Part shown: positions 11,915 to 54,186 of the stretch, one piece after another
How the letters are laid out: every line of letters starts with the position of its first letter
Position numbering within the stretch: position 1 is the first letter of the stretch
Assembly: GCF_000142905.1 (NCBI RefSeq)
Contig: NW_013657669.1
Location: 434,001-498,000, forward strand
Source: Thecamonas trahens ATCC 50062
Lineage: Eukaryota > Protista > Apusomonadida
Direction of reading: 5' to 3'
DNA: 64,000 bases
Translations under genes and position numbers: made by a program
Notes under the pieces: model-generated
What the model was told of the DNA's origin: nothing
Database searches by the model: none
The model's input: only the letters and a program-made list of their open reading frames with translations

Positions 11915-14900
11915 CTAAAACTCTGGCTGGTCGACTGGTTGGCCGTCTGGTGGATCAACAGGCGAGTCTGAGTCTGGGTGTGATAAGAACGAGCTTGACA
12001 ACGGCGGATCGGGGTGGGTAAGCTCGACCGTTGCTTCGCCCGACGCGGTGGTGGACACGTGCGACATTGAGATGAGATTGTCAAGCGTGATTTTGCGCTG
12101 GTACGAGCGTGAGAAAGAGACCGAGCGCGACGCATGCGGGCGAGCCGACGCGCGCCTGGACCCTGGAGGTCGCGGTGACGCCAGGTGCTCGCTCAACCGC
12201 TCGCTTGCGCCGCTGACCCTCCGGCGCGACCGTGGCGTTGCGCTTGAGTGGATCACAAATGACGACCTCCGCTTGCGACGGAGCTTGGGCGAGGCTAGGC
12301 CGGATGACTTGAGGGAGGCCACTGAATACGAGTCGGTTGCGATGGCGCTGGCATCCGCCACGACGGCTGTGTCCGAGGTTACTGACTCGAAGCCACTGCT
12401 AATGGCTGGGGGATGACCGACGTGGGTCGATATTGACAACGTTTGCGGCAAGGGCGATGCGTCGGTCGCCGTCTCGCTGAGCTGGCCTGTCACGGGCGCG
12501 AATTTGCGCGCCGCAGGCGCGGCAGCAACTCGGCGGGCAAGACGGGCCTTGCGGATTGTACCGATGCGTCGCTTGAAGCTGGCCTTGCGCCCGTGGCGTG
12601 GGGACGGCGAGAGCGTTCCACAACTGGAAGAATGGTCCAGCTCGCTGCCATCGGGATCCAAGAGGCTGTGGATGTGGGCCAGTGCCAACGTTGCCTCGCC
12701 GTCCATTGTCAACCGCCGCGACCGCATTAGCGCCGACGGCGAACGCTGCCGTTTGGCGCGGCGGTGGGTCGCCGGGTTAAGTGCACACAACGACTGCTCG
12801 TTCTGCAAGGTAGGCGTGGCGAACACGTCGTCGCCATCGTTGCAGGGCGTGGTGGTGGCCACCTCCTGCGAAATCGCCACATGACCTGTCCGTGACATGG
12901 TCGTCGACGAGGTGAGACACGACTCGTCAATGGAGCGATGCAGAGGGAGGTCGCATTCGGAACGTGCTTCTCGTGGTATGTCGTTGAGTGTCACCCGTCG
13001 GGATCGGCGGCCGCGGCGTGCCTGGATGACGCTCACGCTCTGGCTAAGGCTCCGTGAGCGAGTGCATGGTGAGGCCGATTGCGAGCCCGAACCCGAGTCC
13101 AAGCGCCGCTCTGAGCGAACGTCTGCCCGGGTCAGTCCGCGCAGCTTCTTGTTGTACTTGCGGCCTGAGAGCTTCCCAAGCCTTGCCTGGAACAACTCGA
13201 ACCGATGCGAAAGCGCGTCGGCAAAGACGCCAAGACGGTCGACACGGTTTGGCGCAATCGCGGCCACCTCGGCGTCGACCACCACCTGCCCACCGGTACC
13301 CGAGTCACCAACAGTCTGCGCGTATGCCATGGCCTGACCCGAATACGTAAACCGCAGCGTTCGCTCGTCAAAGGTAAGCGTTGGCTGACAGACAGCAATG
13401 CCCATCCGGACCCGCAGGCCGTGCCACAGAGCATCCGGGCTGTCTCTGGCGTCGGAAGGGAGCCGCTTGTCGTGCAGGATCGCCGGCGGCCAGAGTGCAT
13501 CCATCAGGTCGTGTTGGATCTGGACAGCAGCATTCAGCGCGTCCTCGGTGTCCTGGAACGCCACCACATACGAGTCACCCTCGGTCCGGATAACGTACCC
13601 GCGGAACTTGTCCAGTGCTTGCCGGAAAATCCGGTCGTGCTCTTCGATGGCCACCATCATGTCGCTTGAATAACTCTCCCACAGCATCGTTGACGACTGG
13701 ACGTCCGAGATAAGAATGGCGACTCGACCCGATGGCGCAATTGCGGCCTGGCTTGCCTTGCGCATCGCCACGTACTTGCGGCGCGAGTGCTGTCTCTTAC
13801 AGCGCAAGAGCGCAGCGAGGCAGAGAGCCAGCACGACAGCAGAGACTGCCGAGACACCCGTAACAAGGATGGAGAACTGCTTGCGCCTCTTCGCCGCATC
13901 ACTGTCTGTCGATGTGCACGTCGACTGCCCGCCGCACACTCCGCACGCGTCGAGCTCGAGGCCCGAGTTGGGCACCATGTCGCAGCCCGCGCACGACGAC
14001 GAGTTGCCAAAGCACACACCGCACGCATCGACAAACCGGCCCGAGCCAAAGCAGATGCCGCACGCGTCAAGCGCGGCGTTCTCGCCGTAGCAGATCTGGC
14101 ACGCGTCCTTGTCGGCATTCAACCCGCCACACACTCCGCACGAGTCAAGCCCAGCGTTGCCGCCAAAGCACACACCACACGCATCCAGGAACACGTTGGG
14201 TGTGATGCCTGTACTTCCGCCAGTGCACATGCCGCATGCATCAACGAGCGCTGTCCCGCCGCAAACGCCCGCGCAGTCGAAAACAAACTCCGGCCCGAGC
14301 GTCGCATTGCACGACACCACACAGTCACCAGTCCCGTTACACACGCCGCAGGCATCGACAACCGAACCCATGCCGTCGCATCCGCCACAACTCGTGTGGT
14401 CGCCACCGCAAATTCCACACGCATCGATTGACAGCGTCGCATTCGCGCAGCCCTCGCAGCGCTGGAAACACTGGCCACAAAAGTCCTGGTGCATCCGCGG
14501 AGGCCGTCCGGTTGTTCCGCCGACACACACGCCACACTCGTCGATGATCGCACTCCCATTGCATACGCCAGCGCAATCGAAAACGACTGGCGTCGACGTC
14601 GAATTGTCACACGAAGCAAAACATGTATCGACCGCTGAGCCGCCACACACCCCGCAAGCGTCAAAGTGTGCACCGCCTTGCGGAATAGGCACGCCGTCGC
14701 AGCCGAGGCACGATGAGCTATCGCCATTGCACACGCCGCACACATCATTAACAACACCCGAGTTGGGCACACCGTCGCACCCGGCGCACGTCGTGTTGTC
14801 ACCCCATGCAACCCCGCATGCATCCACGCACGCGTCGTCACCAAAGCACATCCCACAGGCGTCGATGTCCGAGTTGTCGCCAAAGCACACGCCGCAGCTG

Positions 14901-15056
14901 TCCTTGTCCGCATTTGGCACCCGCCCAGTTCCGGGCCCGGCGCACACAGAGCAGTCATCGTAGGCTGCTGGTGGCGGACAAGGCGGAAGTGGTGGCGGTG
15001 GTGGTGATGGCGGCGGTGGCGGTGATGGCGGCGGCGATGGCGGCGGCGGCGGCGAT

Positions 15057-15087
<31 letters not shown>

Positions 15088-17778
15088 GCGCAACAACGCA
15101 CGTGCTGCCGATCAGCTGCATTCCCATGTTGCACGATGTGCAGTTGGAGGCAGTCTGTGAGCATTCGGCACATGGCGCATCACAGGATGCGCATACTGCG
15201 GTGGTCGACACTGCGTATCGGCCCGGCGGGCACGCCCAGCACGATGAAAGGTCATCTGTCAGGGCGTAGCCCTCGAAGCACATTGTGCACGACCCCGAAC
15301 CAACGCCACACGTGCCGCTTCCCGGCGATGAACAGAATGTTCGCTCATCGCACGCCGTGCCAGTCCACCCGGGTGCACACGGTCCCGAGCACGGGGCGTT
15401 CGGCTCAAAGCTCGGAGCCAGAGCGCAAGCAGCCGGCCCGTGATGACACGCATCGCTTGCGCCACAGCCATTTGCAAGGCCAGTCGTAGAGGAGGAGCCC
15501 TCGCAGAGAACGTCCGGCTGGCAGCTGAGGCCGTAGTTGGAACAGACCGCCGAGGCATCAAAGCCGACCGAACCCATTGTGGTGAAATGGATGGCGGCGG
15601 TCGGCGCAGTGCCGGTGGCGGTATTGGTGGTGATGAGGCTAGAGACCACATCCGAGCCGGCAGCAGGTGCAGTGGCAAAAATGGCGCCACCGTGGACGGC
15701 GGTATTGTTGGCGATTGTGGTGTCGACGAGTTTGAACATGCCGCCGCCACCGACCGCCATGCCGCCGCCGTTCCCCATGGCTGCTGCATTGCCGATGACG
15801 GTACAGCGGCTTGAAGTCACATTCGTGGATGTGGTGTGCACGCCGCCGCCGTCGCCGCTGCCTGCGACGTTGCTGGTGATGGAGAGGTCGACAAGCAGAG
15901 TCGGAGCAGCCGTGGCACCAAAGCCAAGACCGCCCCCGACGATGCCGGCCGAGTTGTGCGAGATGGTTGAGCTCGAAAGGACGACCGGGCCGGAAGCGTA
16001 GAGTGCGCCGCCAGCGTCAGCAGCCGAATTGAATACAAAGCTTAGGTCAGCAGCATCCAGTGACGACGCCGTGCCGACGCCGAGCACGGCACCGCCGTGA
16101 GTAGCCGTCGCCGAGTTGGCGGAAAAGTCACCACCTGTCGCTACTAGGATATGGCGATAAGCAATCGCGCCACCGGCGTGGGCCGAGTTGCTGGCAAACG
16201 TAGACGGGAGCGGACCAAGCGAGGCGGAGGCAAGCAGGCCAAGATCAATGGCGCCACCGGTCGATCCGGGTGCGTTGGCAACATTACTTGTGAACGATGA
16301 GTCCGAGACAGCAAGCGAGGGCGCGCCGAGGGGGGCGGCAGCGATCTGGTTCGCAACAGCGACAGCACCGCCGGTCGCAGCTGCAAAGTTGGACGAAAAC
16401 GAGGCAGACGTCAGTGTGGCGCGCGCGCCATCACCAACATGCACGGCGCCGCCGTGCGCAGCAGCGACGTTGCTTACGAGTGAGGCGCCGAGTACATGAC
16501 ACACGGCACTACACGCAAGGGCGCCGCCGGAGCCGGAGCCACCGGCTGCCGTATTGTGCGAGAGAACGGCGCCTCCGTGAACGTCGATGCGGGGAGCGGC
16601 AGCTGCTCCTCCGGGCCCGGCCGTGGCAGTGTTGAATGTCAAATACGAAGCGCCAGAAACGACAATCCAGGCTGTCGCTGAGCCATGTACGCACGCGCCG
16701 CCGCTGGGGGCGGCATTGTTCGATGCATTGGTGGCCAAAAGGGTGAGGTTCCCGATCCCTGCCGCGTAGACAGCGCCTCCAGTTGTGGTGGCGAGGTTTG
16801 CAGAAAAGGACACAGCGGTGGCGATGAGCGGACCCGAAGTGTAGATAGCGCCACCGCTGCCGCCCAACGCCGAATTGGCTTCAAAGACTGAGGTCGAGAT
16901 CGAGTGAGCCGAGCCACCGGTGAGGACGATCGCGCCGCCATCGGCGGCGGCCGAGTTGTTGACAAAGGTCGAAGCGGCGACGACAACGTCACAACCGGTG
17001 ACAGCAAGCGCTCCACCGGCCGAGCCTGTGTTGCCGTCAAAGATCGAGTCAGTGACGGTGAGCGAGCATGACGAGGTGGACGCCGAGCTGACGGCAACAG
17101 CGCCCGGGCCGCTTGCGCCGCGAATGTCAACGGCGTCGAGCACGACCACAAACGATGACGAAGAGTGTGGGGCGTTGAGCTCCAGGACCGGTGCGGGTGC
17201 GGCGCCGGTTCTCTGTGATGAGACTCTCCGCCACGTTAGCTGGACTGACATCACAGAGGCTGCCGAGGCGACGGTGACGAGTGAGTGGGCGCTGAGGCCA
17301 TCCGCGGCGACATCCTCGACAAGGACGGTGGTGGACGAATCGGCGACGATGACATCAAAGACAGCGTCGTCAAAAGCGAGCGTAGCGGCTGCAGTCGGAG
17401 CGGCAAAGGTGAGATCGCGAACCATGAAGACTTGGTTGAGGGTTTGCGAGGTGATGCGGAACAGCGGCCCGCGACCTGAGCGGTCCTGGCCGACGCCACA
17501 CGAGAAGACGACCACGTCGCCGGGGTTTTGGCACGAAACATGAAGCTGGGGCTCGGCGAGTTGACGGATATTGTGGTAATGGAGCATGTCTCCTGGTCGT
17601 AAGTCCCGGCCTGGAAGCAGATGGAGATCGGCGAGCTGGCCGAGGTCACCGTCGTTGACGCCAGGAAGAGGCTCAGCTGTGACAGAGCCGTCCCGCCCGG
17701 GGAGACCACGTGGTCACAGCCATGGGCGGAACATGCCACCAGAGCCAAGACGAGGCAGGCCAAGGCCCCAGGTGACAT
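11915..17778 (-). CDS. Single-pass receptor-type class III nucleotide cyclase (signal peptide, GGA(I/V)/FxxN beta-helix repeats, EGF/furin-like, SPPPP linker, DxCGxCxG repeats, TM, cyclase); frameshift at ~17527
   Basis: MSPGALACLVLALVACSAHG signal in the upstream frame joins the 1890-aa ORF if one A is added (RAK|NPGDVV). TM ILVTGVSAVSAVVLALCLAALL. Cyclase motifs ISDVQSSTMLWE, RTEGDSYVVAF, GLRVRMGI, GGQVVV. Confidence 0.88.
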
Positions 17779-18368: not shown

Positions 18369-21300
18369 ATGCAGCACACGCCTGACCGGTTCCGGGCTCC
18401 GCTGCGAACGCCATCGGCGCATGCCACCCGGGCTGCGCGGGAGCGGCGGACGCGGGTGCGGGCGCTGTCGAGCCAGGCCGAGACACGGTCGGCGCGGCTG
18501 ACGGCGGCTTCGGGAAGGCTAGTGACGAACAGAGGTGGAGGGGGCTCGCGGAGCAGTGGGCAGGGTGCAAGGGGGGGCAGGGGTGGCTTTCCGTTGTCGC
18601 CCATGCCGCCGCTCCGTCCGTTTGGCTCGGCGCTCGATAGCAGCTCGTTTGCGTCGCGGCGGGCGACGGTGCGGGCGGCGAGCCCGCCTCGGGCTGGCGA
18701 GTGGCGCAAGCCACGAACGACGACGACAACGTCGTCACTGGCTATGATCTCGCTCTCATTGGACGAGCCGCGGGCATCGCCACTGATGGGCGCGACCAGT
18801 GGTGCGCGAGCAAGAGCGCGGACGCGCGGCGCGCTGTCGAGCGTGGCGATCAGCTCGCCGTCGCCGCTGCTTTCAGATGCGTTTCTCTCGGGTGCGCTGC
18901 GGCGGCAGCCGTGGCCAGCACGGGTGACAGCGCCCGATGCTGAGCCTGCCGCGCTTCCAAGTGACGATGCGGGCGATCCGTACGAGTATGTGTATGAGTA
19001 CTCGGGCGACGGGGCGGCAGAAGTGCCCGAAGTTGTGGTCCTTGCGAGCACCCACGACGGCGTAGAGCGGACAGTTTCAAGCTTGTCGATGCGGTCTGAC
19101 GACGGATCAGCAATGACCGCGGTGGAGAACGAGCGGAAGCGAAGCATGCCGTCGCGGACTGGCTCGTTGTCGTCGGTCCAGCTGGCGGACGGGCGGTCAG
19201 GCAAGCCGTCGCGACTTGCGCGTGACGCGCTGGCGGTCTCGGCCTCGCCACGGGCGATTTCAGACTCGTCGTCTGGCTCGACACCGTATGCCGACGACGA
19301 GTGTGGGGTGAGCGGCGATGGGGTGAGCATGTCTGCGGTGTCGACGCCGCGGGTGGTGCGATCGCCATCGCGGTCGCTGGAGCGCGATCGCATCGAGGCT
19401 CTCGAAGGTAAGCTCGAGCTTCCGTTGTTTCGGTCTGGAAGCAGTTTAGGGCTTCGCCGCGGACGCTCCGACTCTTTGGCAGTGCTACCAGGATCACACG
19501 AAGAAGAGCAGCTTCTCTCTGCTGCTTCGTTTGCGGCGTCGTCGGAGCAGGCGTTCCGATCATCGCCGCCAACCGCGGTGCGGCCTAAAACGGACGCATC
19601 GCGGCCGACTTCGCCGCTGGGACGGTCGGCGTCGGCGTCGGCCCTACCGTCGCCCAAGGCACAAATGGAATCGGGGCTCGGGCCTGGACCTGCGTCCGCG
19701 CCTGCGCCGCCGCCGCTGCCTCCGCCGCAGCTTATGGCGAGCTCCGAGTCCGGGTGGACGCTGGCTGTGCGGCGGGCGCTGCAGCACCGGTTGTGGATAT
19801 GGATCATGGCGTTTCTTGCGCTGTATGCAATTGTCATCGACGACGTGCTTGTAGTGGCTGCGGTGGGCGGTGATGACGTGGGCAAGGGCATTGTGCTTGG
19901 CGCCCAAATTGTGTCCGTGGTGGTGGGGCTAGTGTTTTGTGGCGAGCTGGCGGCGCGGGCGAGCGCGCTACGCGGCAGCTATGTGGTGTCACTTGAGTTT
20001 GCGGCCGACGTAGCGGTGGTGGTCTCGTTTGTGCCCGAGGTTGCGTCGCTCATTGCTGGCGAGGACGTGGTGGCGCTGGCGCTTGTGGGGCGGACGTCGC
20101 TGCCAGAGCTACAAGCGGGAGCGGCGGCGCGTGGGGCTGCGGCGATTTTGCGGGTCGTTCGGCTCGTGCGTGTGCTCAAACTGCGAGTCCTGTTTGCAGC
20201 AGTGACGGCATCGACGCTGACAGCGATTGCCAACGCGCTGTCGGATCCCTCGTCAGGCGGCGAGGCGTCGGCGATTGTGGTGCTGACGGGCGAGGGCAGC
20301 GAGAGCGGATCCGGGTCGTCGGACGCGTCGCGGGCAACGCATCGGCTTGTGGAGCGCGCCGGCATCCAGATATCTGTGGCGCTGGTTGTCCTCATTGCGG
20401 CGGTGCTCTGCCTCGTCCATGGGGCCAACCTCTCGCTGGAGGGCTCGCTCTCTGCTGTGGGCGACGCACATGCTGTGGCCGGACTGGAGCAGCTCACGCT
20501 TGCGGTGAGCGGGGCAAGCTCGGCGTCCGGGTACGCGCGTGCGGTAGATGCGTATGTGGCGAGGTTTGCGGGCTCGGGCTCAGGCTCGGGGGCGGCGGCT
20601 GCGGGCTTTTCGCTCGCGCCGCGCCTCTTGGTGGTGAGTGTGGACGGCCGGCTGCTGGCGGGGAGTAGCCAGAAGGTGTCCCCGCTGCGGGAGCTGTTCG
20701 TAGAGGCTGTGGGTGTGGGTGGCGGGCGGGCGTACTTTGACGTCTCGACGGCAGAGCGGGTCAAGGCCGGAACGCACTTGCTTCTGCTTTTGGTCTTCCT
20801 CGGCTTTCTCACCGGCATCAACCGAAGCCTCGCATTGTATGCCGAGCGGCTGGTGACCGAGGCGATTGCGCGGATCTCACTCATTATCTACCACCTGACC
20901 CGGCACTGGCAGCACAAGCAAGACGCACTGACAGCGTCAGCTGACAACCTCGCAGGACGGTCCAAGAGCAAGGCGCCGCTGGTGCTGCGGCAGGTGATTG
21001 CCTCGATCGAGCAGGCTGCAGACGAGCAAGCGTCGACGTCGGTCGATCTGCGGGCCAAGTCGCGGTTGGCAACGGTGAAGGAGAATCGGCTGTCTGCGGC
21101 GCTGGCGGTGACGAACCGCGAGCTGGCGCGGGCGAACCCCAAGTTCTGGTATCCTCCGGCGCCGGTCTTTCCGATTGGCGTCCTCGACGAGCGGTTCCTC
21201 CGACTGACGGTGGACTCGCGTGGGATGAAGGTGGTCGACGCCGGTGCCAAGTTTGCGCTGGTGGCATACCTGACATCGCCGCGGCACAAAGATCGCGAGT

Positions 21301-22568
21301 ATGAGCGTGCGTTTCTCACCACGTTCCGACTCTTCATGGAGCCGGCGGAGCTTGTCGATCTGCTCATCCTCGAGTTTTGCTTTCTCCCGGACCAGAGCGA
21401 GGTGGCCGCGGTCGACTTTGACTTTGAGGACTGGGAGGTGTCCGAGCAGACGCCCAAGCAGACTCGGGTCATTCTGGTTGTGGAGAAGTGGCTGCGGCTA
21501 GCGTTTGAGCGCGACTTTGTGCCGGACACGCCACAGAGCGAGAGCGCCAGTGGAAGCCTGAGCGACTCGGACAACACGAGCAGCAGGAGCAGCGTGGCCA
21601 GCCGGGCGAGCGGAGATACGAGTCGGTCTGAGGCGATGGAACGCCTCACGCACTTTCTTTCGCTGCTGGTGGCGTCGTCGCGGCACGCGGCGGCGGCGCG
21701 GATCGGGACCTGGGTAGAGAAGCAGCTCAAGGGGCTCAACGACGGTGAGGCCTCCCCAAGCAAGGGCAGCCTGGGCACGCCACGATCACCAGCGCCGGTG
21801 GGCAACTTGTCGGTGAGCGTGGACGTCGACAGCGTGTCTGTGGTCGAGCTCGGGCGGCAGCTCTGCTTGGTGGAGCACAAGCTGTATTCTGCGATCAAGC
21901 CGTTTGAGCTTGTAGTGAGCTCGGGCAAGGTCAAGGGCCGGGCCGGGGTGGGCACTGCAGCACTCAAGGCCTCTTTCGACCACTTTAACAAGGTCGGGCT
22001 CTTTGTGCAGGCGGCAATCGTGTATGCGCCGACGGCCAAGGCGCGGTTGGCGCGGCTGCGCAAGTTCATCGAGCTCCTCTCGTTCTTCATCGAGGAGCAC
22101 AACTACAACGGGGTGATGGAGGTGCTCGGGGGGCTCTCGTCGGTGGCGGTTGCGCGGCTCAAGCGGCTGTGGAGCAAGCTCGACTCGAGCTCCGCCGAGA
22201 CGTTCAACTCGATCAAGACCATCATGTCGGCGTCCAAGTCGTACAAGTCGTACCGGTCGCTGGTAGGCTCGCTCGACGAGGCCACGCCTGTCGTTCCGTT
22301 CCTCGGCGTCTACCTCTCGGACCTGGTGTTCCTCCTGCAGGGCAACGACGGCGAGACCGACGACGGCCTCGTTGCCTTTCAGCGCTCGTACCACTTGACG
22401 GGAGCGGTGACGGCTGCACTGCGGTGGCAGAGCAATCGGTACTCGTTCATCAAAGTGCCCACGATTTCCCGGGTCTGGAACGTGGATGCGCAGGATTTGG
22501 ACGTGTCCGAGGATGCACTGTACGAGGCATCGCTTGTGCTTGAGCCGCGGCAGGCTCGGCGGCGGTGA
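18369..22568 (+). CDS. Polytopic membrane protein with voltage-sensor-like module fused to RasGEF (REM + CDC25)
   Basis: Ser/Arg-rich N-terminus, hydrophobic helices from ~19780 to 20880 including ILRVVRLVRVLKLR; REM FLTTFRLFMEPAELVDLL; CDC25 ELGRQLCLVEHKLY..FNKV..NYNGVMEVLGGL..VARLKRLW..VPFLGVYLSDLVFL..GN. Confidence 0.9.
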   Translation: MQHTPDRFRAPLRTPSAHATRAARERRTRVRALSSQAETRSARLTAASGRLVTNRGGGGSRSSGQGARGGRGGFPLSPMPPLRPFGSALDSSSFASRRATVRAASPPRAGEWRKPRTTTTTSSLAMISLSLDEPRASPLMGATSGARARARTRGALSSVAISSPSPLLSDAFLSGALRRQPWPARVTAPDAEPAALPSDDAGDPYEYVYEYSGDGAAEVPEVVVLASTHDGVERTVSSLSMRSDDGSAMTAVENERKRSMPSRTGSLSSVQLADGRSGKPSRLARDALAVSASPRAISDSSSGSTPYADDECGVSGDGVSMSAVSTPRVVRSPSRSLERDRIEALEGKLELPLFRSGSSLGLRRGRSDSLAVLPGSHEEEQLLSAASFAASSEQAFRSSPPTAVRPKTDASRPTSPLGRSASASALPSPKAQMESGLGPGPASAPAPPPLPPPQLMASSESGWTLAVRRALQHRLWIWIMAFLALYAIVIDDVLVVAAVGGDDVGKGIVLGAQIVSVVVGLVFCGELAARASALRGSYVVSLEFAADVAVVVSFVPEVASLIAGEDVVALALVGRTSLPELQAGAAARGAAAILRVVRLVRVLKLRVLFAAVTASTLTAIANALSDPSSGGEASAIVVLTGEGSESGSGSSDASRATHRLVERAGIQISVALVVLIAAVLCLVHGANLSLEGSLSAVGDAHAVAGLEQLTLAVSGASSASGYARAVDAYVARFAGSGSGSGAAAAGFSLAPRLLVVSVDGRLLAGSSQKVSPLRELFVEAVGVGGGRAYFDVSTAERVKAGTHLLLLLVFLGFLTGINRSLALYAERLVTEAIARISLIIYHLTRHWQHKQDALTASADNLAGRSKSKAPLVLRQVIASIEQAADEQASTSVDLRAKSRLATVKENRLSAALAVTNRELARANPKFWYPPAPVFPIGVLDERFLRLTVDSRGMKVVDAGAKFALVAYLTSPRHKDREYERAFLTTFRLFMEPAELVDLLILEFCFLPDQSEVAAVDFDFEDWEVSEQTPKQTRVILVVEKWLRLAFERDFVPDTPQSESASGSLSDSDNTSSRSSVASRASGDTSRSEAMERLTHFLSLLVASSRHAAAARIGTWVEKQLKGLNDGEASPSKGSLGTPRSPAPVGNLSVSVDVDSVSVVELGRQLCLVEHKLYSAIKPFELVVSSGKVKGRAGVGTAALKASFDHFNKVGLFVQAAIVYAPTAKARLARLRKFIELLSFFIEEHNYNGVMEVLGGLSSVAVARLKRLWSKLDSSSAETFNSIKTIMSASKSYKSYRSLVGSLDEATPVVPFLGVYLSDLVFLLQGNDGETDDGLVAFQRSYHLTGAVTAALRWQSNRYSFIKVPTISRVWNVDAQDLDVSEDALYEASLVLEPRQARRR

Positions 22569-22641: not shown

Positions 22642-23688
22642 ATGTCTGCTGGCGAGGGAGAGTACCGGCATGTGCTTGTGGCGTACGACCGGAGCAGCCA
22701 TGCCCATGAGGCACTGGTGTACTATGTGAAGACTTTGTGTATGTATTGAGGAGGGGGAGGGGGGGGGGGGGGGGGGAGGAGGAGGGGGAGGGGGAGGGGA
22801 CGACTTATGCATGGACGGTGGCTGGGTGTGGTCGGGACAATCGGGACGGTGCCAGTCAACGAGGCGTCGGATCGGATTTCACTGGTGACAGTGGCCAAGA
22901 AGGATTCGGATGAAGAGGCGGCACGTATGGCACTGGCGCAGGGGCGGGCGACGTTGGTGGAGCTGGGCGTGGGCGAGGAGAGTATCGAGGACGATGTGCT
23001 GGCGACTGGGGCGGTGGCGGAGGCTGTGGTCGAGGCTGCCGAGGCAAGGGCCTGCGATCTGCTGGTGGTTGGCGCGCGCGGGCGCGGCAAGGTCGCGCGG
23101 TTCTTCCTCGGCTCTGTCTCGACGTATGTGGTGTATCACGCGAGCGCGCCTGTGCTTGTAGTCAAGTCTGGTGTGGTGGCACGCCTCCGTGAGGAGCATC
23201 CCGAGTGGGGGCCCAAGGTGGCGGAGAGCACCTCGATCCTTTGTTGTCTGGATGGGTCGGCTGCGGCGGATGCGGCATTCAATGCAGCGCTGGTGGCTGC
23301 GCGCGGGCGCGAGGTCATTCTCTTTACGGTTGTCGAGCCGATGCGCGAGGTGCCCGGCGACTCGGGCGAGGAGGGCAGCAGCGAGGTCCGCGAAGTCCTC
23401 CTCTCCATCCACCAGCGCAAGCTCGATGCCGCCGAGGCGCTGCTGAAGCAGTACGAGGAACGCGCGCGTGACATCACCGACTCGGTCAAGGCGTACGTTG
23501 CCGTCGGTGATGCGCGTGACATGGTCACACGCACTGTCGACGCTGCCGCTACCGACATCATCACCCTCGGCGCCTCGGGCAAGACCGGTGAGAACGTGCC
23601 GCTCACCATCGGCTCAGTCGCCACCCACGTTCTACATGCCGTCAACGTCTCGGCTGTCCTCATCTGCCAGCCGACGCGACAGGAGTAA
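22642..23688 (+). CDS. Tandem universal stress protein (Usp-Usp); intron 22739-22855
   Basis: Exon 1 MSAGEGEYRHVLVAYDRSSHAHEAL splices (GTATGT..CAG) in frame to the ORF with DLLVVGARGRG..FLGSVS and a second domain ILCCLDGS..IITLGASG..IGSVA. Confidence 0.88.
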
Positions 23689-23708: not shown

Positions 23709-25640
23709 CTAGCAAAAGTCGTCGTCGTCATCCGACGAGAGCACAATCAGATTGGCGTCGTCGTCGGGGAGAATTGGCTTGGCCGAGAGGAGCCGAGCAG
23801 CCTTGGTCGGGCGCTCGCCGGCAGCAGTGCCGGCTGGGCGCTTGTGGGAGGAGGATGGCTGCTGCGCAGCGGGGGCGGGTGGGAGTGGCTGTGAAGTGGC
23901 TGGGTGAAGTGATGCAACTGGTCGAGGCGGGGCAGTGGTGGGAGTCGGCCGGCCGCTCCGCAGAGCCACCAGCGTCGGGTGGTCGTTGATGACAGGGACC
24001 GGCGCAGAGCAGGCGGCGTCAGCAAAGACAATGCCGACGGCGTTGAAGTACACAGTGTCAAGCAGGCCGTCGTCATCGTCATCGTCATCATCATCGTCCG
24101 AGGCCGAGCCCGAGCCCGAGCCCGGGCCGGGGGTGGTCGCACAAGCAGCCGGCAGGTTGAGCGATGGCGCGAGTGCCGGGTCGGCGGTGAGGTCGAGGAG
24201 TAGGCGCATGAGCGGATCGACGGCAAGGTTCTCGACAGGAAGGTCGACCTTGCACACCGCGCACCGCCACTGATTGGCGACGCCGTTCATGGCGAGGTAG
24301 GATTCGAGATCGTAGGCCTGAAAGTGGCGGCAGGCGCGGCCGCGGACCGGTGTGGTCATGCGGGTGAAGGAGAGCGGACAGGTGAGGGCGACCGGAAGCG
24401 AGTCCTGGGTCACGCCCGACGAGGCCGACGAGACAAAGATGTCCATGATGGCGCCAAAAGCGGCATGGAGGTCCATCCAGGGGCGGGCGTGGACGATGTG
24501 AGCGGCGAGCATGCGCTGCGAAATGGTCCGCTTGGCAAGGACTGTGTAGAGGTAGCCGCAGGTGCAGTGCTGGCTCGAGATGGTGATGGTGTTGGAGGCG
24601 CGGAGGTGCGGAAGAAGATCGAGCTCGGCCGCGCCAGCAGCAGCGGTCTCGAGCCAGTGCCCGTTGACGGCGACGGCGATGTCAGCGCCGGGCGGCCAGG
24701 TGTGGATGCGCTTGGCGTCACGCCGATGGTAGGCGCGGAGGACAATGGAGAAGACCGGATCGTCGCCACGGGCGGTGAGCGCGGCGTTGGCCTGGCGCAG
24801 GATGTTGAGCGAAGTCGACGGCGCAATGGTGATGGTGTAAGTTGCCGACGAGCCAGCGCGCGAGTGCCGAAGGTCGATGGGCGCAAGGAGCGGCGGTGCG
24901 ATGCAAGTGGAGAAGACCGAGCCGTTGCAGTACTCGCGGGTCGTGTCGCTGTAGGGCTGGACGACGCGAAGGAGGGCGTCGACGTTGGTCGGCGTCACCC
25001 GCGAGGCAAACGGGATGTCCAGGAACAGGCCCTCGTACAGCGTGCCGGACTCGATGCTGAAAGGCGCCTGGCGGAGCTTGGCCATCGCCGATGGCGGCGT
25101 CTCTGCGCCGACCTCCCAGCCGAGCGGAAGCCGCGGCGAGTGCCTTGCCTCTTCGGCTTGACGCCACCAGGCGGCAGCGGCGGCAGCAGCCGCCTCGCGA
25201 GCAGTGCTGATTGGTGGCGGACGGGGGCGGGCGGAGGCGACGGTTGTTGAGCTTGATGCCTCCGTCGATCCGGCAGGAGCGGCGACCGAGGCAAAGGCGG
25301 CGGCGATGTTGTCGAGTTCCTTGGACTGCTTGGCGCCGAGGAGCGGGCGGAGGCGGGCAGAGGCGAGATCCGAGATGAGCGGAAGCGAGGCGAGGGAGGG
25401 AGACGACGGTGGGAGGAGGACAGCGGCCTTGGCCAGGGCCTGGAGTGCGGCAACGAGTGCCATGTGGATCTTGCGCTTGCGTACGGTGGCCAGGTCGTCG
25501 AGGAGCGGTGAGGCGAGGACGCGGGCCAGGTCGGCAAAGGCCGAGGAGGGGTCACCGCCTCCACCCTCGACAGTCGCAGCCCGCGCCGCCTGCTTGGCTG
25601 CCCTGAGGCGGGCAAAGACCTCGCCGACCGGGTCGCCCAT
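23709..25640 (-). CDS. SP-RING (MIZ) zinc-finger SUMO E3 ligase, ZMIZ/PIAS-like
   Basis: VALTCPLSFTRMTTPVRGRACRHFQAYD..WRCAVC; ZMIZ-like TWP..VNG..NTITI..CTCGYLY; C-terminal SIM-like LIVLSSDDDDD. ATG 25640; the longer ORF start lies in a tandem repeat. Confidence 0.85.
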   Translation of the reverse strand: MGDPVGEVFARLRAAKQAARAATVEGGGGDPSSAFADLARVLASPLLDDLATVRKRKIHMALVAALQALAKAAVLLPPSSPSLASLPLISDLASARLRPLLGAKQSKELDNIAAAFASVAAPAGSTEASSSTTVASARPRPPPISTAREAAAAAAAAWWRQAEEARHSPRLPLGWEVGAETPPSAMAKLRQAPFSIESGTLYEGLFLDIPFASRVTPTNVDALLRVVQPYSDTTREYCNGSVFSTCIAPPLLAPIDLRHSRAGSSATYTITIAPSTSLNILRQANAALTARGDDPVFSIVLRAYHRRDAKRIHTWPPGADIAVAVNGHWLETAAAGAAELDLLPHLRASNTITISSQHCTCGYLYTVLAKRTISQRMLAAHIVHARPWMDLHAAFGAIMDIFVSSASSGVTQDSLPVALTCPLSFTRMTTPVRGRACRHFQAYDLESYLAMNGVANQWRCAVCKVDLPVENLAVDPLMRLLLDLTADPALAPSLNLPAACATTPGPGSGSGSASDDDDDDDDDDGLLDTVYFNAVGIVFADAACSAPVPVINDHPTLVALRSGRPTPTTAPPRPVASLHPATSQPLPPAPAAQQPSSSHKRPAGTAAGERPTKAARLLSAKPILPDDDANLIVLSSDDDDDFC

Positions 25641-25744
25641 AGTGTGGCCTGGGGTGGAGTGGGGTGGAGTGGAAGTGCTGGCTGTCTTGGCGAGGAGGGG
25701 GGGAGAGGGGGGGTACCAGCGAGCACAAGCAAGGAGGGCCGCCA

Positions 25745-25968
25745 CCACCGACTGCCACCATCGACTGCCACCATCGACTGCCACCATCGACTGCCACCAT
25801 CGACTGCCACCATCGACTGCCACCATCGACTGCCACCATCGACTGCCACCATCGACTGCCACCATCGACTGCCACCATCGACTGCCGCCACCAACCACCA
25901 TCAACCACCACCAACCACCACCAACCACCACCAACCACCATCAACCACCATCAACCACCATCAACCAC
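25745..25968. repeat. Compound minisatellite: ~10 x 13-bp CGACTGCCACCAT followed by ~8 x 10-bp CACCA(A/T)CAAC-type units
   Basis: Direct inspection of the tandem units. Confidence 0.95.
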
Positions 25969-51202: not shown

Positions 51203-52114
51203 TCAGCGCTTGACCCACTGCGGGGCTCTGCGGGCCTTGCGGAGGCCGGCAAGCTTGCGCTCGACCATGCGCGGGTCACGGGTCATCATGCCGGCGGCCT
51301 TGAGCGGCTTGCGGAACGCGGGGTCGACAATCTCGAGAGCGCGGCAGATGCCGAGGCGAAGGGCGCCGGCCTGGCCGGTGTGGCCACCGCCCTTGACGGT
51401 GGCGCGGATCTTGAAGGCTCCCAGCTTGCCCAGCAGCCTCAGCGGCTCGATGACGTGGTTGCGGTGATGCATGGCCGGAAAGTAGTCGGCCAGCGGCTTC
51501 GAGTTGACCACCAGCACGTCTGCAGGCTGCGGGGCGGCCGGATGGGCAACAGGCTCGACCCAAACCCGGGCGATCGAGGTCTTGCGACGACCGGTCCCGT
51601 ACGCCCGGCCGAGCGCATCGAGCGTCTTGGCCTTGCGCCGCTCCAGCTGCTCCGACTCGTGGGCAGTCATCTCTGTGGCCTTCTTGGCGTTGGCCGCCAG
51701 CACATGCTCCTGCCACAGATCATCCAGCGGGGGCAGCTCCGGCTCGAGAGCCCCGAGCGGATCAGACAAGTCGTAGCTCGGCAGCGGGGCGTGCGGCAAG
51801 TCGTCCGAGCCGAGGACGTCAATGACTTGGGCAAGGTCGTCAGCCCCAACCTCATCAGCCCCAACCTCATCAGCCTTGCTCTCCTCGCCCGACGTAGAGT
51901 ATGCCATAACAGGCATGGTGTTGTTCATAGACAACGCACCCGCAGCAGAAGCGGCAGAAGCAGTCGCTGTAGCCGTCCGGACCAGCCGAAGACTGGTGGT
52001 AGCGGACTGCGGAGAGGGTGGATGGGGGGGGAGTGAGTCGGGCGGGTCAGCGGGGTGGGAGAGGGGGGGGGGAATGGGGGAAAGGAGGAGGAGCGGTACA
52101 CGTACGCGTAGCAT
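51203..52114 (-). CDS. MRPS9: Mitochondrial ribosomal protein uS9m; in-frame intron 52105-52007
   Basis: GTGRRKTSIARV, GGGHTGQAGALRLGICRAL, TRDPRMVERK..ARRAPQWVKR; presequence-like MLR|SATTSLRLVR. Confidence 0.93.
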   Translation of the reverse strand: MLRVRVPLLLLSPIPPPLSHPADPPDSLPPHPPSPQSATTSLRLVRTATATASAASAAGALSMNNTMPVMAYSTSGEESKADEVGADEVGADDLAQVIDVLGSDDLPHAPLPSYDLSDPLGALEPELPPLDDLWQEHVLAANAKKATEMTAHESEQLERRKAKTLDALGRAYGTGRRKTSIARVWVEPVAHPAAPQPADVLVVNSKPLADYFPAMHHRNHVIEPLRLLGKLGAFKIRATVKGGGHTGQAGALRLGICRALEIVDPAFRKPLKAAGMMTRDPRMVERKLAGLRKARRAPQWVKR

Positions 52115-52276
52115 GTGGTGTATGATGTGGTGGGGGTGAGGAGGGGGAGTGAGGGGTGGGGGTGGTGGCTGTGGTGCGGGTGGAGTGTGGTGACTGCTGT
52201 TGGCTGGGTGGTGGCCGTGGGGCGGGGGCGGGGGGACGGGGGCGAGACGCGTTGGGAGGGCGGAGGGGGGAGGGGG

Positions 52277-52376
<100 letters not shown>

Positions 52377-52754
52377 NNNNNNNNNNNNNNNNNNNNNNNN
52401 NNNNNNNNNNNNNNNNNNNNNNNNNNNNNNNNNNNNNNNNNNNNNNNNNNNNNNNNNNNNNNNNNNNNNNNNNNNNNNNNNNNNNNNNNNNNNNNNNNNN
52501 NNNNNNNNNNNNNNNNNNNNNNNNNNNNNNNNNNNNNNNNNNNNNNNNNNNNNNNNNNNNNNNNNNNNNNNNNNNNNNNNNNNNNNNNNNNNNNNNNNNN
52601 NNNNNNNNNNNNNNNNNNNNNNNNNNNNNNNNNNNNNNNNNNNNNNNNNNNNNNNNNNNNNNNNNNNNNNNNNNNNNNNNNNNNNNNNNNNNNNNNNNNN
52701 NNNNNNNNNNNNNNNNNNNNNNNNNNNNNNNNNNNNNNNNNNNNNNNNNNNNNN
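52377..52754. other. Assembly gap
   Basis: N run. Confidence 1.
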
Positions 52755-53145
52755 GACCCCTACCCTACTAGTCGTGTCCCCCGACCCCTACGTGCCCCCT
52801 CCCCCCCCCCCCTCCCCCCGGCTTGCGCCTCCCCCCCTCCCCGCTGCCCGCCCACCTATCACCAACGGAATCGTCATCGATCATCATCGCTGTGATGCCT
52901 CACATGATCTAAATCTCCTCTCCATCCCCCCCCCCTCCTTCCCCCCTTCCTCCCGGTCCTCCTGGTCCTCCCGGTCCTCCCCCTCTCAAGTCCGTCGTCG
53001 CACCACCGCCACCTGTTCCGCGCGCCTTCACCCCCCCCCTCACCCCCTCACCCCCCCCCTCCCCTATTGCCCACGGTACCCACACCTCACCCACACTCGC
53101 CACACCCACAACTACCACACATTACACACGTTCTGGACCAAGAGC

Positions 53146-53739
53146 ATGTCGTCGCGACGGAGCTCGAACGCGTCGGGCAAGTCGGGCAAGTCGGGCAGGT
53201 CGGGCTTGCTCTCGCCGTCGGTAGTGGGCGGAGCAAGCGGGATGGGATCGAGGAGTTCTTTCGGAGGAAGCCAGTCGGCTGCATCGTCGTTGGCGATGGC
53301 TCTGACGGACGATCAGCTGGCACAGTTTGAAGACGCGTTCTCACTCATGGCCGACGCAAAGTCCAACGTCATCACCCACGATGGCTTGGCCTCGGTCTTT
53401 GACATGCTCGGCCTCGGCGCCAATGATGACGACATCGAGAACATGCTCAACGAGGTGGAGCCGTCAGGCTCGCAGCAACTCTCTTTTGATCAGTTCCTCA
53501 CAATCATGTCCCGCTCGCTCGAGGACAAGAGCTCTGACGACATCCTCTACGCCTCCTTCCAGGTCTTTGACGTCGACGACTCGGGCACCATCAACCTCCA
53601 AGAGTTCCGTGGAGTGCTGGAGATGCTCGGCCAGCAGCTGACCGATGAAGAGTACATCCAGATCATCCGTGGCGCTGACACCGATGCCGACGGCACCATC
53701 GACTTTGAAGAGTACAAGCAGATGCTGAGTCAGGGCTGA
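53146..53739 (+). CDS. Calmodulin/centrin-like EF-hand protein with Ser/Gly-rich N-terminal extension
   Basis: LTDDQLAQFEDAF; N-lobe loops degenerate; C-lobe loops DVDDSGTINLQEF and DTDADGTIDFEEY canonical. Confidence 0.9.
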   Translation: MSSRRSSNASGKSGKSGRSGLLSPSVVGGASGMGSRSSFGGSQSAASSLAMALTDDQLAQFEDAFSLMADAKSNVITHDGLASVFDMLGLGANDDDIENMLNEVEPSGSQQLSFDQFLTIMSRSLEDKSSDDILYASFQVFDVDDSGTINLQEFRGVLEMLGQQLTDEEYIQIIRGADTDADGTIDFEEYKQMLSQG

Positions 53740-54186
53740 TCCGTCTCCTCGATCTCTCTCGCCCTCCTGTCCCCGCATGTGAACTCCAGCTGTTGCTGTC
53801 CGGCAGCCTGGAATCCATCAGATGGTTGAGTCTTTGCTCCCGTCCCAAGCGCCGCACTAGCTGTATCCGCCATGCCTGGTCCGCCGCCCAATGAGTCCAT
53901 CTTCCTTCCCACGCCACCACCCTGCCACGCCACCACCCCGCCACGCCACCACCACGCCACGCCACTAACCCACCGATCCTCTCCCCGCTAACCGATCTCC
54001 CCTCTTCACTAAAGTCCGTACCTCACACGCCACCGGGTTGCCATCCCGTCCGCCTATCGCCTCTCGCCTCTCGCCTCTCGCCTGTCGCCTGTCGCCTGCC
54101 CCCCCCTCCCCCCCCTCCTCCTCCTCCACCACCTCGCTCCCACTCGCACAACACCTCACTCCACCCTCACCCCCCACCGCCCCTCC

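What the first reader, a model, noticed from the sequence alone, without database searches (positions are those of the whole stretch)
18369..22568. Putative voltage-sensing RasGEF: S4-type membrane module fused to REM-CDC25
Seen: one uninterrupted ORF carries about 6 hydrophobic helices and then a complete REM + CDC25 domain. The helices include S1-like IMAFLALYAIVIDD, S2-like VFCGE, S3-like EFAADV and R-V-V-R-L-V-R-V-L-K at 20151-20180, a basic residue every third position. After a loop come two more TM helices, FDVS before the last one and RLVTEAIARI after it. Established: RxxRxxR with acidic S2/S3 countercharges defines voltage sensors, and sensors coupled to enzymes exist (VSP phosphatases; Paramecium/Plasmodium ACalpha channel-cyclases). 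Inference: the motif order recalls the ACalpha membrane part, so that module seems to have been joined to a Ras exchange factor instead of a cyclase. This would link membrane potential directly to Ras/Rap activation. I know of no description of this architecture. No GYG selectivity filter is visible, so it is more likely a sensor than a channel.
Basis: partly seen in the sequence, partly recalled or inferred. Interest (0 to 1): 0.9.

Follow-up and report, generated by a model that had tools for sequence, protein, structure and literature searches.

The report
Voltage-sensor-like membrane module fused to RasGEF
One gene of the protist Thecamonas trahens joins a real relative of the voltage-sensor domain of ion channels, with no ion pore, to a Ras-activating enzyme, so membrane voltage may switch on Ras directly, which has not been tested.

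Summary
Window 18369-22568(+) is one 1399-codon ORF, Thecamonas trahens AMSG_03106. It has six hydrophobic helices, with RVVRLVRVLK at 20151-20180, followed by full REM and CDC25 domains.

The sensor reading is supported for the family but is weaker for this copy.
- A profile of the membrane module matches Nav1.5, Cav, Hv1 and Kv1.2 voltage sensors (best E=9e-9), with S2 F-x-x-E, S3 Asp and S4 in register.
- A paralog model superposes on the Ci-VSP sensor (Z 14.6). The window model does so for S1-S3 only (Z 11.3), and its S4 is low-confidence.
- Alone, this copy scores below Pfam's Ion_trans cut-off. It keeps 4-5 of the family's 8-9 S4 charges.

It is not a channel. S5-S6 has no filter motif and encloses a roughly 110-residue α/β loop. 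That part corresponds to Pfam 38.1 PF26726 "Helical_RasGEFs".

Thecamonas has about ten copies of the module. Seven carry a RasGEF, two a degenerate cyclase and one no output. Marine-metagenome eukaryotes share the GEF fusion. Pigoraptor, and probably apicomplexans, have the cyclase form, which supports the ACα link.

The searched papers describe no voltage-sensor RasGEF. Voltage dependence, a single transcript and GEF activity remain untested. First-stage notes on paralogs elsewhere in this genome reached the same reading.

The parts
18369..22568 (+). Whole ORF, 1399 codons plus stop. It is Thecamonas trahens AMSG_03106, a multi-pass membrane RasGEF.
18488..18580 (+). In-frame 93-nt GT-AG intron of the NCBI gene model. 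It lies in the disordered N-terminus and does not affect the domain architecture.
   Evidence: Contigs of unknown library type cover it unspliced.
18369..19778 (+). N-terminal region of about 470 aa. It is low-complexity (Ser/Ala/Arg/Pro-rich) and presumably cytoplasmic and disordered. The true start codon is not verified.
19779..19859 (+). S1 (aa 471-497), ending in the near-invariant family Asp-Asp (IVIDD).
19881..19958 (+). S2 (aa 505-530) with F-C-G-E. This is the F-x-x-E charge-transfer-centre motif, aligned to FVLE of Nav1.5.
19977..20048 (+). S3 (aa 537-560) with the conserved Asp of FAADV. The invariant Tyr and Phe of the family lie just before it.
20124..20204 (+). S4 (aa 586-612). 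R595, R598, R601 and K604 are in register, with R589 upstream. The family's R1, R2 and R4 are replaced by Q, A and A.
   Evidence: The window model has pLDDT 31-38 here.
20205..20342 (+). S4-S5 linker (aa 613-658). It is Gly/Ser-rich, poorly conserved and variable in length among paralogs, unlike the short amphipathic S4-S5 helix of channels.
20343..20423 (+). S5 (aa 659-685), the start of the PF26726-like 'Helical_RasGEFs' part.
20424..20765 (+). Predicted extracellular loop domain (aa 686-799). It has helices plus four beta-strands and an N-L-S sequon at aa 685-687, and no pore-helix or filter motif.
20766..20840 (+). S6 (aa 800-824).
20841..21236 (+). Juxtamembrane helix (ERLVTEAIARI...) plus a helical linker. 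The linker contains the motif APLVLRQVIASIE, which aligns with E-x-x-LL-x-ML-x-x-IG. Both GEF-type and cyclase-type relatives share this motif.
21237..21527 (+). REM (RasGEF_N) domain, aa 957-1053.
21846..22385 (+). CDC25-homology (RasGEF) domain, aa 1160-1339. It is closest to RasGRF1, yeast Cdc25 and SOS. The helical-hairpin motif reads LLQGN, where relatives have xEEGN or xEEGT.

Best explanation
AMSG_03106 is a single multi-pass membrane protein. A cytoplasmic REM-CDC25 Ras exchange factor hangs from a two-part membrane module.

Part 1 (S1-S4) is a divergent but true homologue of the S4-type voltage-sensor domain.

Part 2 has S5, a folded extracellular loop of about 110 residues, S6 and a conserved juxtamembrane helix with a linker motif. 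It corresponds to Pfam 38.1 'Helical_RasGEFs' (PF26726). It is not an ion pore. It is the same transducer found in front of cyclase domains in ACα-type proteins.

Proposed mechanism (inferred, not shown): movement of S4 with membrane potential repacks S4 against S5/S6. That shifts the S6-juxtamembrane helix and changes the accessibility or orientation of REM-CDC25 toward membrane-bound Ras/Rap. Membrane potential, possibly together with something sensed by the ecto-loop, would then set Ras-GTP.

My odds:
- Architecture and VSD homology: about 0.9.
- No pore: about 0.85.
- Real voltage control of GEF activity: about 0.45 in the family, lower (about 0.35) for this charge-depleted copy.
For: Single ORF with REM and CDC25 above the Pfam cut-offs. 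The CDC25 domain matches RasGRF1 at 4e-30, yeast Cdc25 and SOS.

The family profile (8 sequences) against all PDB sequences hits almost only voltage sensors:
- Nav1.5 at E=9e-9 (best domain 1.6e-5)
- Cav1.2 at 4e-4
- Hv1 at 0.005
- Kv1.2 at 0.02
S1, S2 F-x-x-E, S3 Asp and the S4 arginines align in register.

Sub-threshold Ion_trans hits fall on the same profile region (about 3-124 of 241) in 9 family members, at 11.5-24 bits.

The paralog model (pLDDT 74) gives Ci-VSP VSD at Z=14.6, rmsd 2.7 Å over 128 of 136 residues. All top 50 of 48,161 chains contain a VSD or VSD-like S1-S4 bundle. The window model gives Ci-VSP at Z=11.3, rmsd 2.5 Å over 109 residues, and its top 28 are all such chains.

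The architecture recurs in 7 Thecamonas paralogs and in 2 proteins from marine metagenomes. The module also occurs with cyclase-type outputs. Those copies form a clade with 100/98 support.

Atlas links aa 650-870 to PF26726 clusters at score 0.95. It also links the whole model to a PF26726 + Guanylate_cyc + Ion_trans cluster, commonest in Apicomplexa, with TM 0.59.

No filter motif is present.
Against: No functional data exist.

For this copy alone, Ion_trans scores 12.2 bits against a cut-off of 25, and phmmer against PDB finds nothing.

Foldseek E-values are all 0.15 or higher. The VIA Z of 11.3 is below the 13 that the tool warns helical bundles can reach by chance.

S4 of this copy keeps only 4-5 of the family's 8-9 charges and is modelled with pLDDT 31-38. 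The copy sits on a long branch with skewed composition. Another paralog (C65) has lost almost all sensor charges, so the sensor is not under uniform constraint.

S4 is separated from the enzyme by a disordered linker, two helices and about 130 residues, so coupling is indirect.

In this copy Gln replaces the second Glu of the hairpin EEG(N/T) motif, which I recall as Glu942 of SOS1.

No RNA evidence shows one transcript.
Confidence: 0.55

Rival explanations
1. The VSD is a relic. The protein is a receptor-type RasGEF whose real input is the folded extracellular S5-S6 loop, sensing a ligand, ion or contact, as in 2-TM Cache/HAMP receptors. The S1-S4 bundle serves only as a membrane scaffold, or senses lipid or pH rather than voltage.
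For: The ecto-loop is the best-modelled part of the paralog (pLDDT 72-93). It is an α/β domain flanked by two TM helices and followed by a long signalling-type helix. Weak shape matches to dCache sensor kinases (TM 0.30) and feature matches to sensor kinase and HAMP clusters (0.77-0.78) appear. This copy has lost several S4 arginines, and the C65 paralog has lost nearly all sensor charges. The S4-S5 linker is long, disordered and unconserved.
Against: Most family members keep 8-10 basic residues in S4 together with the S2 F-x-x-E, the S3 Asp and the S1 Asp-Asp. That conservation is hard to explain for a mere scaffold. The Cache and HAMP similarities are far below significance. The two inputs need not be exclusive.
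Confidence: 0.3
2. It is a 6-TM ion channel of the voltage-gated superfamily with an unconventional pore formed by S5-S6 (or an omega or proton path through the VSD). The RasGEF is a C-terminal appendage.
For: The overall order is S1-S6, and Foldseek lists whole 6-TM channels. The Paramecium ACα relative is reported to carry a K+ conductance (cited in PMC10651576 and PMC12414865). VSD-only proteins such as Hv1 do conduct.
Against: There is no P-loop or selectivity-filter motif in this protein or in 9 of its 10 relatives. The S5-S6 loop is a folded α/β domain of about 110 residues. There is no short S4-S5 linker helix. The structural matches cover S1-S4 only. The Phytophthora VSD-cyclases likewise lack pore homology (PMC12223298).
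Confidence: 0.08
3. The fusion is an annotation or ORF artefact. Two adjacent genes, a membrane protein and a RasGEF, merely share an open frame in a 65% GC genome.
For: There is no RNA evidence. High-GC genomes have long chance ORFs, and many overlapping ORFs are listed. No contig spans the whole ORF.
Against: The same order, with a conserved linker motif, recurs in 7 paralogs at different loci. It also recurs as single intronless ORFs on two independent marine metagenome contigs. One contig bridges the S5-S6 loop to REM (20448-21555). NCBI annotates one gene.
Confidence: 0.03

Closest known systems
ACα-type voltage-sensor/channel-like adenylyl cyclases (Paramecium, Tetrahymena, Plasmodium; Weber et al. 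2004, as cited in PMC10651576 and PMC12414865) and the Phytophthora VSD-cyclases PPTG_13136/13761 (PMC12223298)
   Same: N-terminal S4-type sensor, followed by further TM helices and a cytoplasmic signalling enzyme. The module here is directly alignable with the cyclase-type Thecamonas paralogs and the Pigoraptor protein, from S1 to the post-S6 linker motif. An Atlas cluster that is commonest in Apicomplexa and carries PF26726 + Guanylate_cyc + Ion_trans matches the model at TM 0.59.
   Different: The output is REM-CDC25, not a class III cyclase. GEF-linked and cyclase-linked modules fall on opposite sides of a 100/98 branch. I could not align a named ACα sequence directly. No K+ pore loop of the kind reported for ACα is seen.
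Voltage-sensing phosphatase (Ci-VSP)
   Same: A VSD controlling a cytoplasmic enzyme without a pore. The Ci-VSP VSD is the best structural match to both models (Z 14.6 and Z 11.3).
   Different: In VSP, S4 joins the enzyme through a short linker. Here two more TM helices, an ecto-domain and about 130 linker residues intervene. The enzyme class is different, and sequence identity is only 13-16%.
RasGRF1 / yeast Cdc25 / SOS (REM-CDC25 Ras exchange factors)
   Same: A complete REM plus CDC25 pair. Matches are E=4e-30 to RasGRF1, 3e-29 to Cdc25 and 7e-26 to SOS1.
   Different: Those are soluble proteins recruited by DH-PH, IQ or SH3-binding modules. None has an integral membrane sensor. This copy has Gln in place of the second Glu of the hairpin EEG motif.
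Pfam 38.1 PF26726 'Helical_RasGEFs' ('RasGEFs all helical domain')
   Same: Residues 650-870 (S5, loop, S6, helix) score 0.93-0.95 against 11 Atlas clusters that carry this family. The clusters come from ciliates, green algae and diatoms.
   Different: The family is missing from the local Pfam copy, so I could not score membership. Its name suggests it was catalogued as a helical domain, not as part of a sensor module. I found no paper on it.
SLC9C1 (sNHE) and Hv1, other non-channel uses of a VSD
   Same: An S4-type VSD coupled to something other than a canonical pore. Both appear among the matches.
   Different: They have different partner domains (transporter or none) and no small-GTPase output.

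Membership tests
S4-type voltage-sensor domain (Ion_trans S1-S4) | Four TM helices, with basic residues at every third position of the fourth. | tested here: met
   Hydropathy and sequence give R595, R598, R601 and K604 in register, plus R589. Paralogs have 8-10 basic residues.
S4-type voltage-sensor domain (Ion_trans S1-S4) | Charge-transfer centre: aromatic-x-x-Glu in S2 and Asp in S3. | tested here: met
   F-C-G-E in S2 and the Asp of FAADV in S3 align with FVLE and LD of Nav1.5 in the profile alignment.
S4-type voltage-sensor domain (Ion_trans S1-S4) | Significant sequence similarity to known VSDs. | tested here: inconclusive
   The window protein alone gives Ion_trans 12.2 bits against a cut-off of 25, and phmmer against PDB finds nothing. 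The family profile that includes it matches Nav1.5 at E=9e-9, and also Cav, Hv1 and Kv1.2. The window module matches paralog L010 at E=3.6e-10.
S4-type voltage-sensor domain (Ion_trans S1-S4) | VSD fold. | tested here: inconclusive
   Window model: Ci-VSP at Z 11.3 and rmsd 2.5 Å over 109 residues, covering S1-S3 only because S4 was trimmed at pLDDT 31-38. Paralog model: Z 14.6 and rmsd 2.7 Å over 128 residues, covering S1-S4, with VSD-type chains throughout the top 50. Foldseek E is 0.15 or higher.
S4-type voltage-sensor domain (Ion_trans S1-S4) | Gating-charge movement with voltage. | not testable with these tools
   Needs electrophysiology.
Voltage-gated cation channel (6-TM with pore) | Re-entrant P-loop with a selectivity filter between S5 and S6. 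| tested here: not met
   There is no G[YFLM]G or TxGxG motif. The loop is a helix-plus-strand domain of about 110 residues.
Voltage-gated cation channel (6-TM with pore) | Short amphipathic S4-S5 linker helix. | tested here: not met
   The linker is about 46 residues, Gly/Ser-rich, with pLDDT under 40. Its length varies from about 25 to 190 residues among paralogs.
RasGEF (REM + CDC25 homology) | Both domains above the curated Pfam thresholds and full length. | tested here: met
   RasGEF_N scores 51.8 bits (cut-off 28.3). RasGEF scores 137.8 bits (cut-off 23.1) and covers 1-179 of 181.
RasGEF (REM + CDC25 homology) | Helical-hairpin motif (P-[FY]-LG-x-[YF]L-x-DL...EEG[NT]). | tested here: inconclusive
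   The motif is present as PFLGVYLSDLVFLLQGN. Gln replaces the second Glu, which five relatives and RasGRF1 keep. The effect on catalysis is unknown.
RasGEF (REM + CDC25 homology) | Nucleotide-exchange activity on a Ras or Rap GTPase. | not testable with these tools
   Needs a biochemical assay. I did not search the genome for Ras/Rap substrates.
ACα-type sensor-cyclase family | The shared membrane module (VSD + S5-loop-S6 + juxtamembrane helix). | tested here: met
   The module aligns end to end with the cyclase-type Thecamonas paralogs and with Pigoraptor P0004. An Atlas cluster with PF26726 + Guanylate_cyc + Ion_trans matches at TM 0.59. No named ACα sequence was available for a direct alignment.
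ACα-type sensor-cyclase family | Class III cyclase catalytic domain. | tested here: not met
   There is no Guanylate_cyc hit. REM-CDC25 takes its place.
Pfam PF26726 Helical_RasGEFs | Match to the family HMM. | not testable with these tools
   The family is absent from the local Pfam copy. The only evidence is the Atlas feature scores of 0.93-0.95.

The most novel reading that the evidence does not exclude
There is an ancient, widespread eukaryotic family of voltage-sensor-coupled Ras exchange factors (VSD, PF26726 transducer, REM-CDC25). It would be sister to the ACα-type voltage-sensor cyclases and would convert membrane potential directly into Ras/Rap-GTP with no channel, Ca2+ or second messenger in between. 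The family is present in apusomonads and, judging by the Pfam 38.1 domain name and the Atlas clusters, probably in ciliates, green algae and diatoms. This would be a fourth kind of effector under direct S4 control.
Probability: 0.4. Interest if true: 0.85.

Novelty: new variant of a known kind. Interest (0 to 1): 0.7.

Why it matters
[quoted passage not shown] A sensor wired to a RasGEF would add small-GTPase signalling to that list. It would also give protists a one-protein route from membrane potential to Ras-controlled motility or polarity.

The same sensor and transducer carry either a cyclase or a GEF, with a conserved post-S6 linker motif. This makes the module a natural system for asking how S4 movement is passed to unrelated cytoplasmic enzymes. 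It could also serve as a template for voltage-controlled GEF tools.

The Thecamonas and Pigoraptor cyclase-type copies extend the VSD-cyclase family beyond the stramenopiles and alveolates to which it was recently thought restricted (PMC12223298).

Tried and rejected
- All three word-indexed protein searches returned only the query or its Thecamonas paralog, probably swamped by low-complexity words. They therefore say nothing about taxonomic range.
- The exhaustive representative search gave only four relatives at E<=1e-3.
- phmmer of the window module alone against PDB gave only a chance hit.
- Foldseek against PDB listed almost only voltage-gated or TRP-type 6-TM channels and VSDs, but never below E=0.15. 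I use it as qualitative support only.
- The search for related loci with the family alignment failed because no block was conserved enough.
- PF26726 could not be searched locally and appears in no paper.
- No run is on record as RNA. The four small runs laid on the gene are low-depth contigs of unknown library type. They show no joints and cover the annotated intron unspliced, so they settle neither splicing nor transcript unity.
- Complex prediction on two copies of S5-to-linker gave 'no answer', which is neither support nor evidence against.
- I considered a K+-channel reading and a gene-fusion artefact and rejected both (see rivals).
- I did not check for Ras/Rap substrates in the genome.
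Its fold class, Cache-like or otherwise, is undetermined.

Full report
**What is there**

The window is Thecamonas trahens ATCC 50062 (G000:C11:434001-498000), about 64% GC. The ORF 18369-22568(+) is uninterrupted and 1399 codons long. It equals AMSG_03106, named 'uncharacterized protein' / 'Ras-GEF domain-containing' by its sources. The 1368-aa annotated model differs only by an in-frame 93-nt GT-AG intron at 18488-18580, in the low-complexity N-terminus.

A hydropathy scan finds six hydrophobic helices between aa 471 and 824. Pfam finds RasGEF_N (aa 957-1053, E=1e-13) and a full-length RasGEF/CDC25 domain (aa 1160-1339, E=4.7e-40). Ion_trans reaches only 12.2 bits (E=0.1) on aa 513-605. The CDC25 part is closest to RasGRF1 (4e-30), yeast Cdc25 and SOS. 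A four-charge S4-like run arises in 1.7% of composition-preserving shuffles, so the motif by itself proves little.

**The gene belongs to a family**

Searching the same genome with the membrane part, and then with a family profile, finds about ten copies of the module.
- Seven carry a RasGEF domain downstream; RasGEF_N was also detected in six of them, but not in C32. They are the window copy, C18a, C61 (annotated 'RalGPS1'), C65, C7 (AMSG_01737, with an EF-hand pair inside REM), C32 and C37.
- Two (C53, C18b) carry a degenerate cyclase-type C-terminus.
- One (C43) has an SH3 domain in front and no catalytic output.

The exhaustive protein search adds four relatives.
- P0002 (1135 aa) and P0003 (1092 aa) have the same module-REM-CDC25 order. 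Both are encoded as single ORFs on marine metagenome contigs, one from a Tara Oceans run. P0002 is 61% identical to AMSG_01737 over the membrane module.
- P0004 is a Pigoraptor chileana fragment. Its module runs straight into the start of a class III cyclase domain (…FGFCDIRTFTDVTE).
- P0005 is a fragment of the C61 protein; it shares a 90%-identity cluster with P0008, the Thecamonas 'RalGPS1'.

This repeated order at independent loci and in independent assemblies is the main argument that the fusion is real.

**Is S1-S4 a voltage-sensor domain?**

Evidence at the family level:
- A profile of eight modules searched against all PDB sequences returns almost only voltage sensors: Nav1.5 (E=9e-9, best domain 1.6e-5), Cav1.2 and Cav1.3, Nav1.3, Hv1 (0.005), Kv1.2 (0.02) and NavAb.
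- That alignment runs S1 to S4 in register. The family's F-x-x-E in S2 matches FVLE, its FFFxLD in S3 matches WCWLD, and its arginine ladder matches SLRTLRALRPLRAL.
- Nine family members give sub-threshold Ion_trans hits on the same region of the Pfam profile, up to 24 bits against a cut-off of 25.
- An AlphaFold2 model of paralog C18a (11-sequence alignment, pLDDT 74.4; S1-S3 83-91, S4 56-68) was aligned to 48,161 PDB representatives. The Ci-VSP sensor came first (Z 14.6, rmsd 2.7 Å, 128 of 136 residues). All 50 listed chains contain a VSD or VSD-like S1-S4 bundle.

Evidence for the window protein itself:
- The model is poorer, with pLDDT 62.6. S1-S3 score 64-88, but S4 and the following linker score only 31-38.
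- Its best match is again Ci-VSP (Z 11.3, rmsd 2.5 Å, 109 residues, S1-S3 only), and the top 28 are all VSD-type chains.
- That Z is under the value the tool warns helical bundles can reach by chance, and Foldseek E-values never drop below 0.15.
- The window copy keeps the S1 Asp-Asp, the S2 F-C-G-E and the S3 Asp.
- Where relatives read VARAGRAARASARAARLVRVVRVVK (8-10 basic residues), it reads ELQAGAAARGAAAILRVVRLVRVLK. It has lost R1, R2 and R4 and keeps R589, R595, R598, R601 and K604.
- It lies on a long branch with skewed composition.

So the domain is a VSD homologue, but this copy is one of the less canonical ones. The C65 paralog has lost almost all sensor charges.

**The second half of the membrane module is not a pore**

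- The S4-S5 connection is about 46 residues, Gly/Ser-rich, unconserved and very variable in length among paralogs.
- S5 and S6 enclose about 110 residues. Both models fold these as helices plus four short strands, at pLDDT 72-93 in the paralog.
- There is no G[YF]G or TxGxG motif in the window protein or in 9 of its 10 relatives.
- N-x-S/T sequons are common in the loop, which fits an extracellular position.
- After S6 comes a conserved helix (family GN-x-x-I-x-x-DA-x-RLV; window …YAERLVTEAIARI) and then a linker motif, E-x-x-LL-x-ML-x-x-IG (window APLVLRQVIASIE). GEF-type and cyclase-type members share this motif.
- The ESM-Atlas feature search places aa 650-870 at 0.93-0.95 next to eleven clusters carrying Pfam 38.1 PF26726 'Helical_RasGEFs'. 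The clusters come from ciliates, green algae and diatoms. One cluster combines PF26726 with Ion_trans.
- That family is not in the local Pfam copy and is named in no searchable paper.

Pfam has therefore catalogued this part as a helical domain of RasGEFs. The architecture is probably widespread, but these Atlas links are leads, not alignments.

**Relation to ACα**

- The shape search of the window model against the Atlas finds a cluster carrying PF26726 (95%), Guanylate_cyc (41%) and Ion_trans (27%). It is commonest in Apicomplexa and matches at TM 0.59 over residues 1-401 of the model.
- The Thecamonas cyclase-type paralogs and Pigoraptor P0004 align with the window module from S1 through the linker motif.
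- In a maximum-likelihood tree of eleven modules, the three cyclase-linked ones form one group (100/98) and all GEF-linked ones lie on the other side. One output swap suffices, and it predates the apusomonad-holozoan split.
- The tree is unrooted, so the direction of the swap is unknown.
- I could not obtain a named ACα sequence for a direct alignment.

**How it probably works**

Shown: a VSD-homologous bundle, a non-pore transducer shared with cyclases, and an apparently intact Ras-type GEF sit in one ORF. The topology places the GEF in the cytoplasm.

Inferred: S4 displacement changes the packing of S5/S6, and so the S6-juxtamembrane helix. This modulates access of REM-CDC25 to membrane Ras/Rap. 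The ecto-loop may add a second input.

I put real voltage control at about 0.45 for the family and lower for this copy. The main rival is a receptor-type GEF that uses the ecto-loop, with a relic VSD (0.3). A channel (0.08) and an annotation artefact (0.03) are unlikely.

**Literature**

- A 2023 review lists every VSD protein class then known: channels, sNHE, ACα, VSP and Hv1. It has no GEF (PMC10651576).
- Searches combining RasGEF with voltage sensor, voltage-sensing or Ion_trans gave nothing relevant. A RasGEF evolution paper does not mention transmembrane forms.
- First-stage notes of this scan independently flagged three other VSD-RasGEF paralogs and two VSD-pseudo-cyclases in this genome. 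My paralog search agrees with them.

**Limits**

- No RNA run was available. The four runs that hold the locus are low-depth contigs of unknown type. One contig bridges the S5-S6 loop to REM (20448-21555), and none spans the gene.
- A homodimer prediction gave no answer.
- Ras/Rap substrates were not searched for.

**Verdict**

This is a new variant of a known kind: a VSD-coupled enzyme with a new effector class. The protein is already in databases and the second membrane half is already a Pfam domain, but it has not been described as a voltage-sensor RasGEF.

Noticed in passing
L014:4078-7032 (-) = G000:C53, and L018:2950-5466 (+) = G000:C18: Two Thecamonas paralogs join the same VSD + S5-loop-S6 module to a degenerate cyclase-type domain. 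L014 has only a weak Guanylate_cyc hit (E=0.21) and reads VHCEVPKF where Pigoraptor has FCDIRTF. With Pigoraptor P0004, this puts VSD-cyclase-type proteins outside the stramenopiles and alveolates to which a 2025 paper restricted them.
   Followed up: partly
L020:3448-5433 (+) and P0009 (AMSG_01737, G000:C7); P0002 on L022/L023: One VSD-RasGEF subfamily has an EF-hand pair inserted inside the REM domain. It is conserved at 61% module identity between Thecamonas and a marine-metagenome eukaryote. This could act as a Ca2+-plus-voltage coincidence input.
   Followed up: partly
L017:1711-4179 (+) = G000:C43: This copy of the module has an SH3 domain in front (aa 307-356) and a canonical S4. The ORF stops about 40 residues after S6 with no catalytic output domain. 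The next ORF downstream ends in what looks like a membrane-protein segment and is probably a separate gene.
   Followed up: no
L016:5473-9558 (+) = G000:C65: This VSD-RasGEF paralog has a decayed sensor. S2 Glu is replaced by Gln, S3 Asp by Glu, and most S4 arginines are lost. Its branch is very long (4.7-5.1). Not every copy can be a voltage sensor.
   Followed up: partly
window 11915-17587 (-): The divergent upstream neighbour is a 1890-aa receptor-type class III cyclase. It has repeat-rich, Cys-rich and Pro-rich ectodomain segments and one TM helix. Guanylate_cyc covers aa 1285-1444 (E=1.3e-11).
   Followed up: partly
window 22807-23688 (+) and 23709-25934 (-): Downstream lie a tandem universal-stress-protein gene (Usp, E=1e-31) and a PIAS-like SP-RING/MIZ protein (zf-MIZ, E=3e-17). 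The latter has an odd repeated N-terminal 'GGSRWWQSMVAVD' stretch.
   Followed up: partly
Atlas clusters (no locus); A bacterial (mostly Spirochaetota) cluster of 337-380-aa 'Ion transport protein domain' proteins resembles the whole six-helix module in shape (TM 0.54/0.62 over 281 residues). It may be a prokaryotic relative of the sensor and transducer unit.
   Followed up: no
window 52001-54000: GC content drops to 0.51 here against about 0.64 elsewhere in the window.
   Followed up: no
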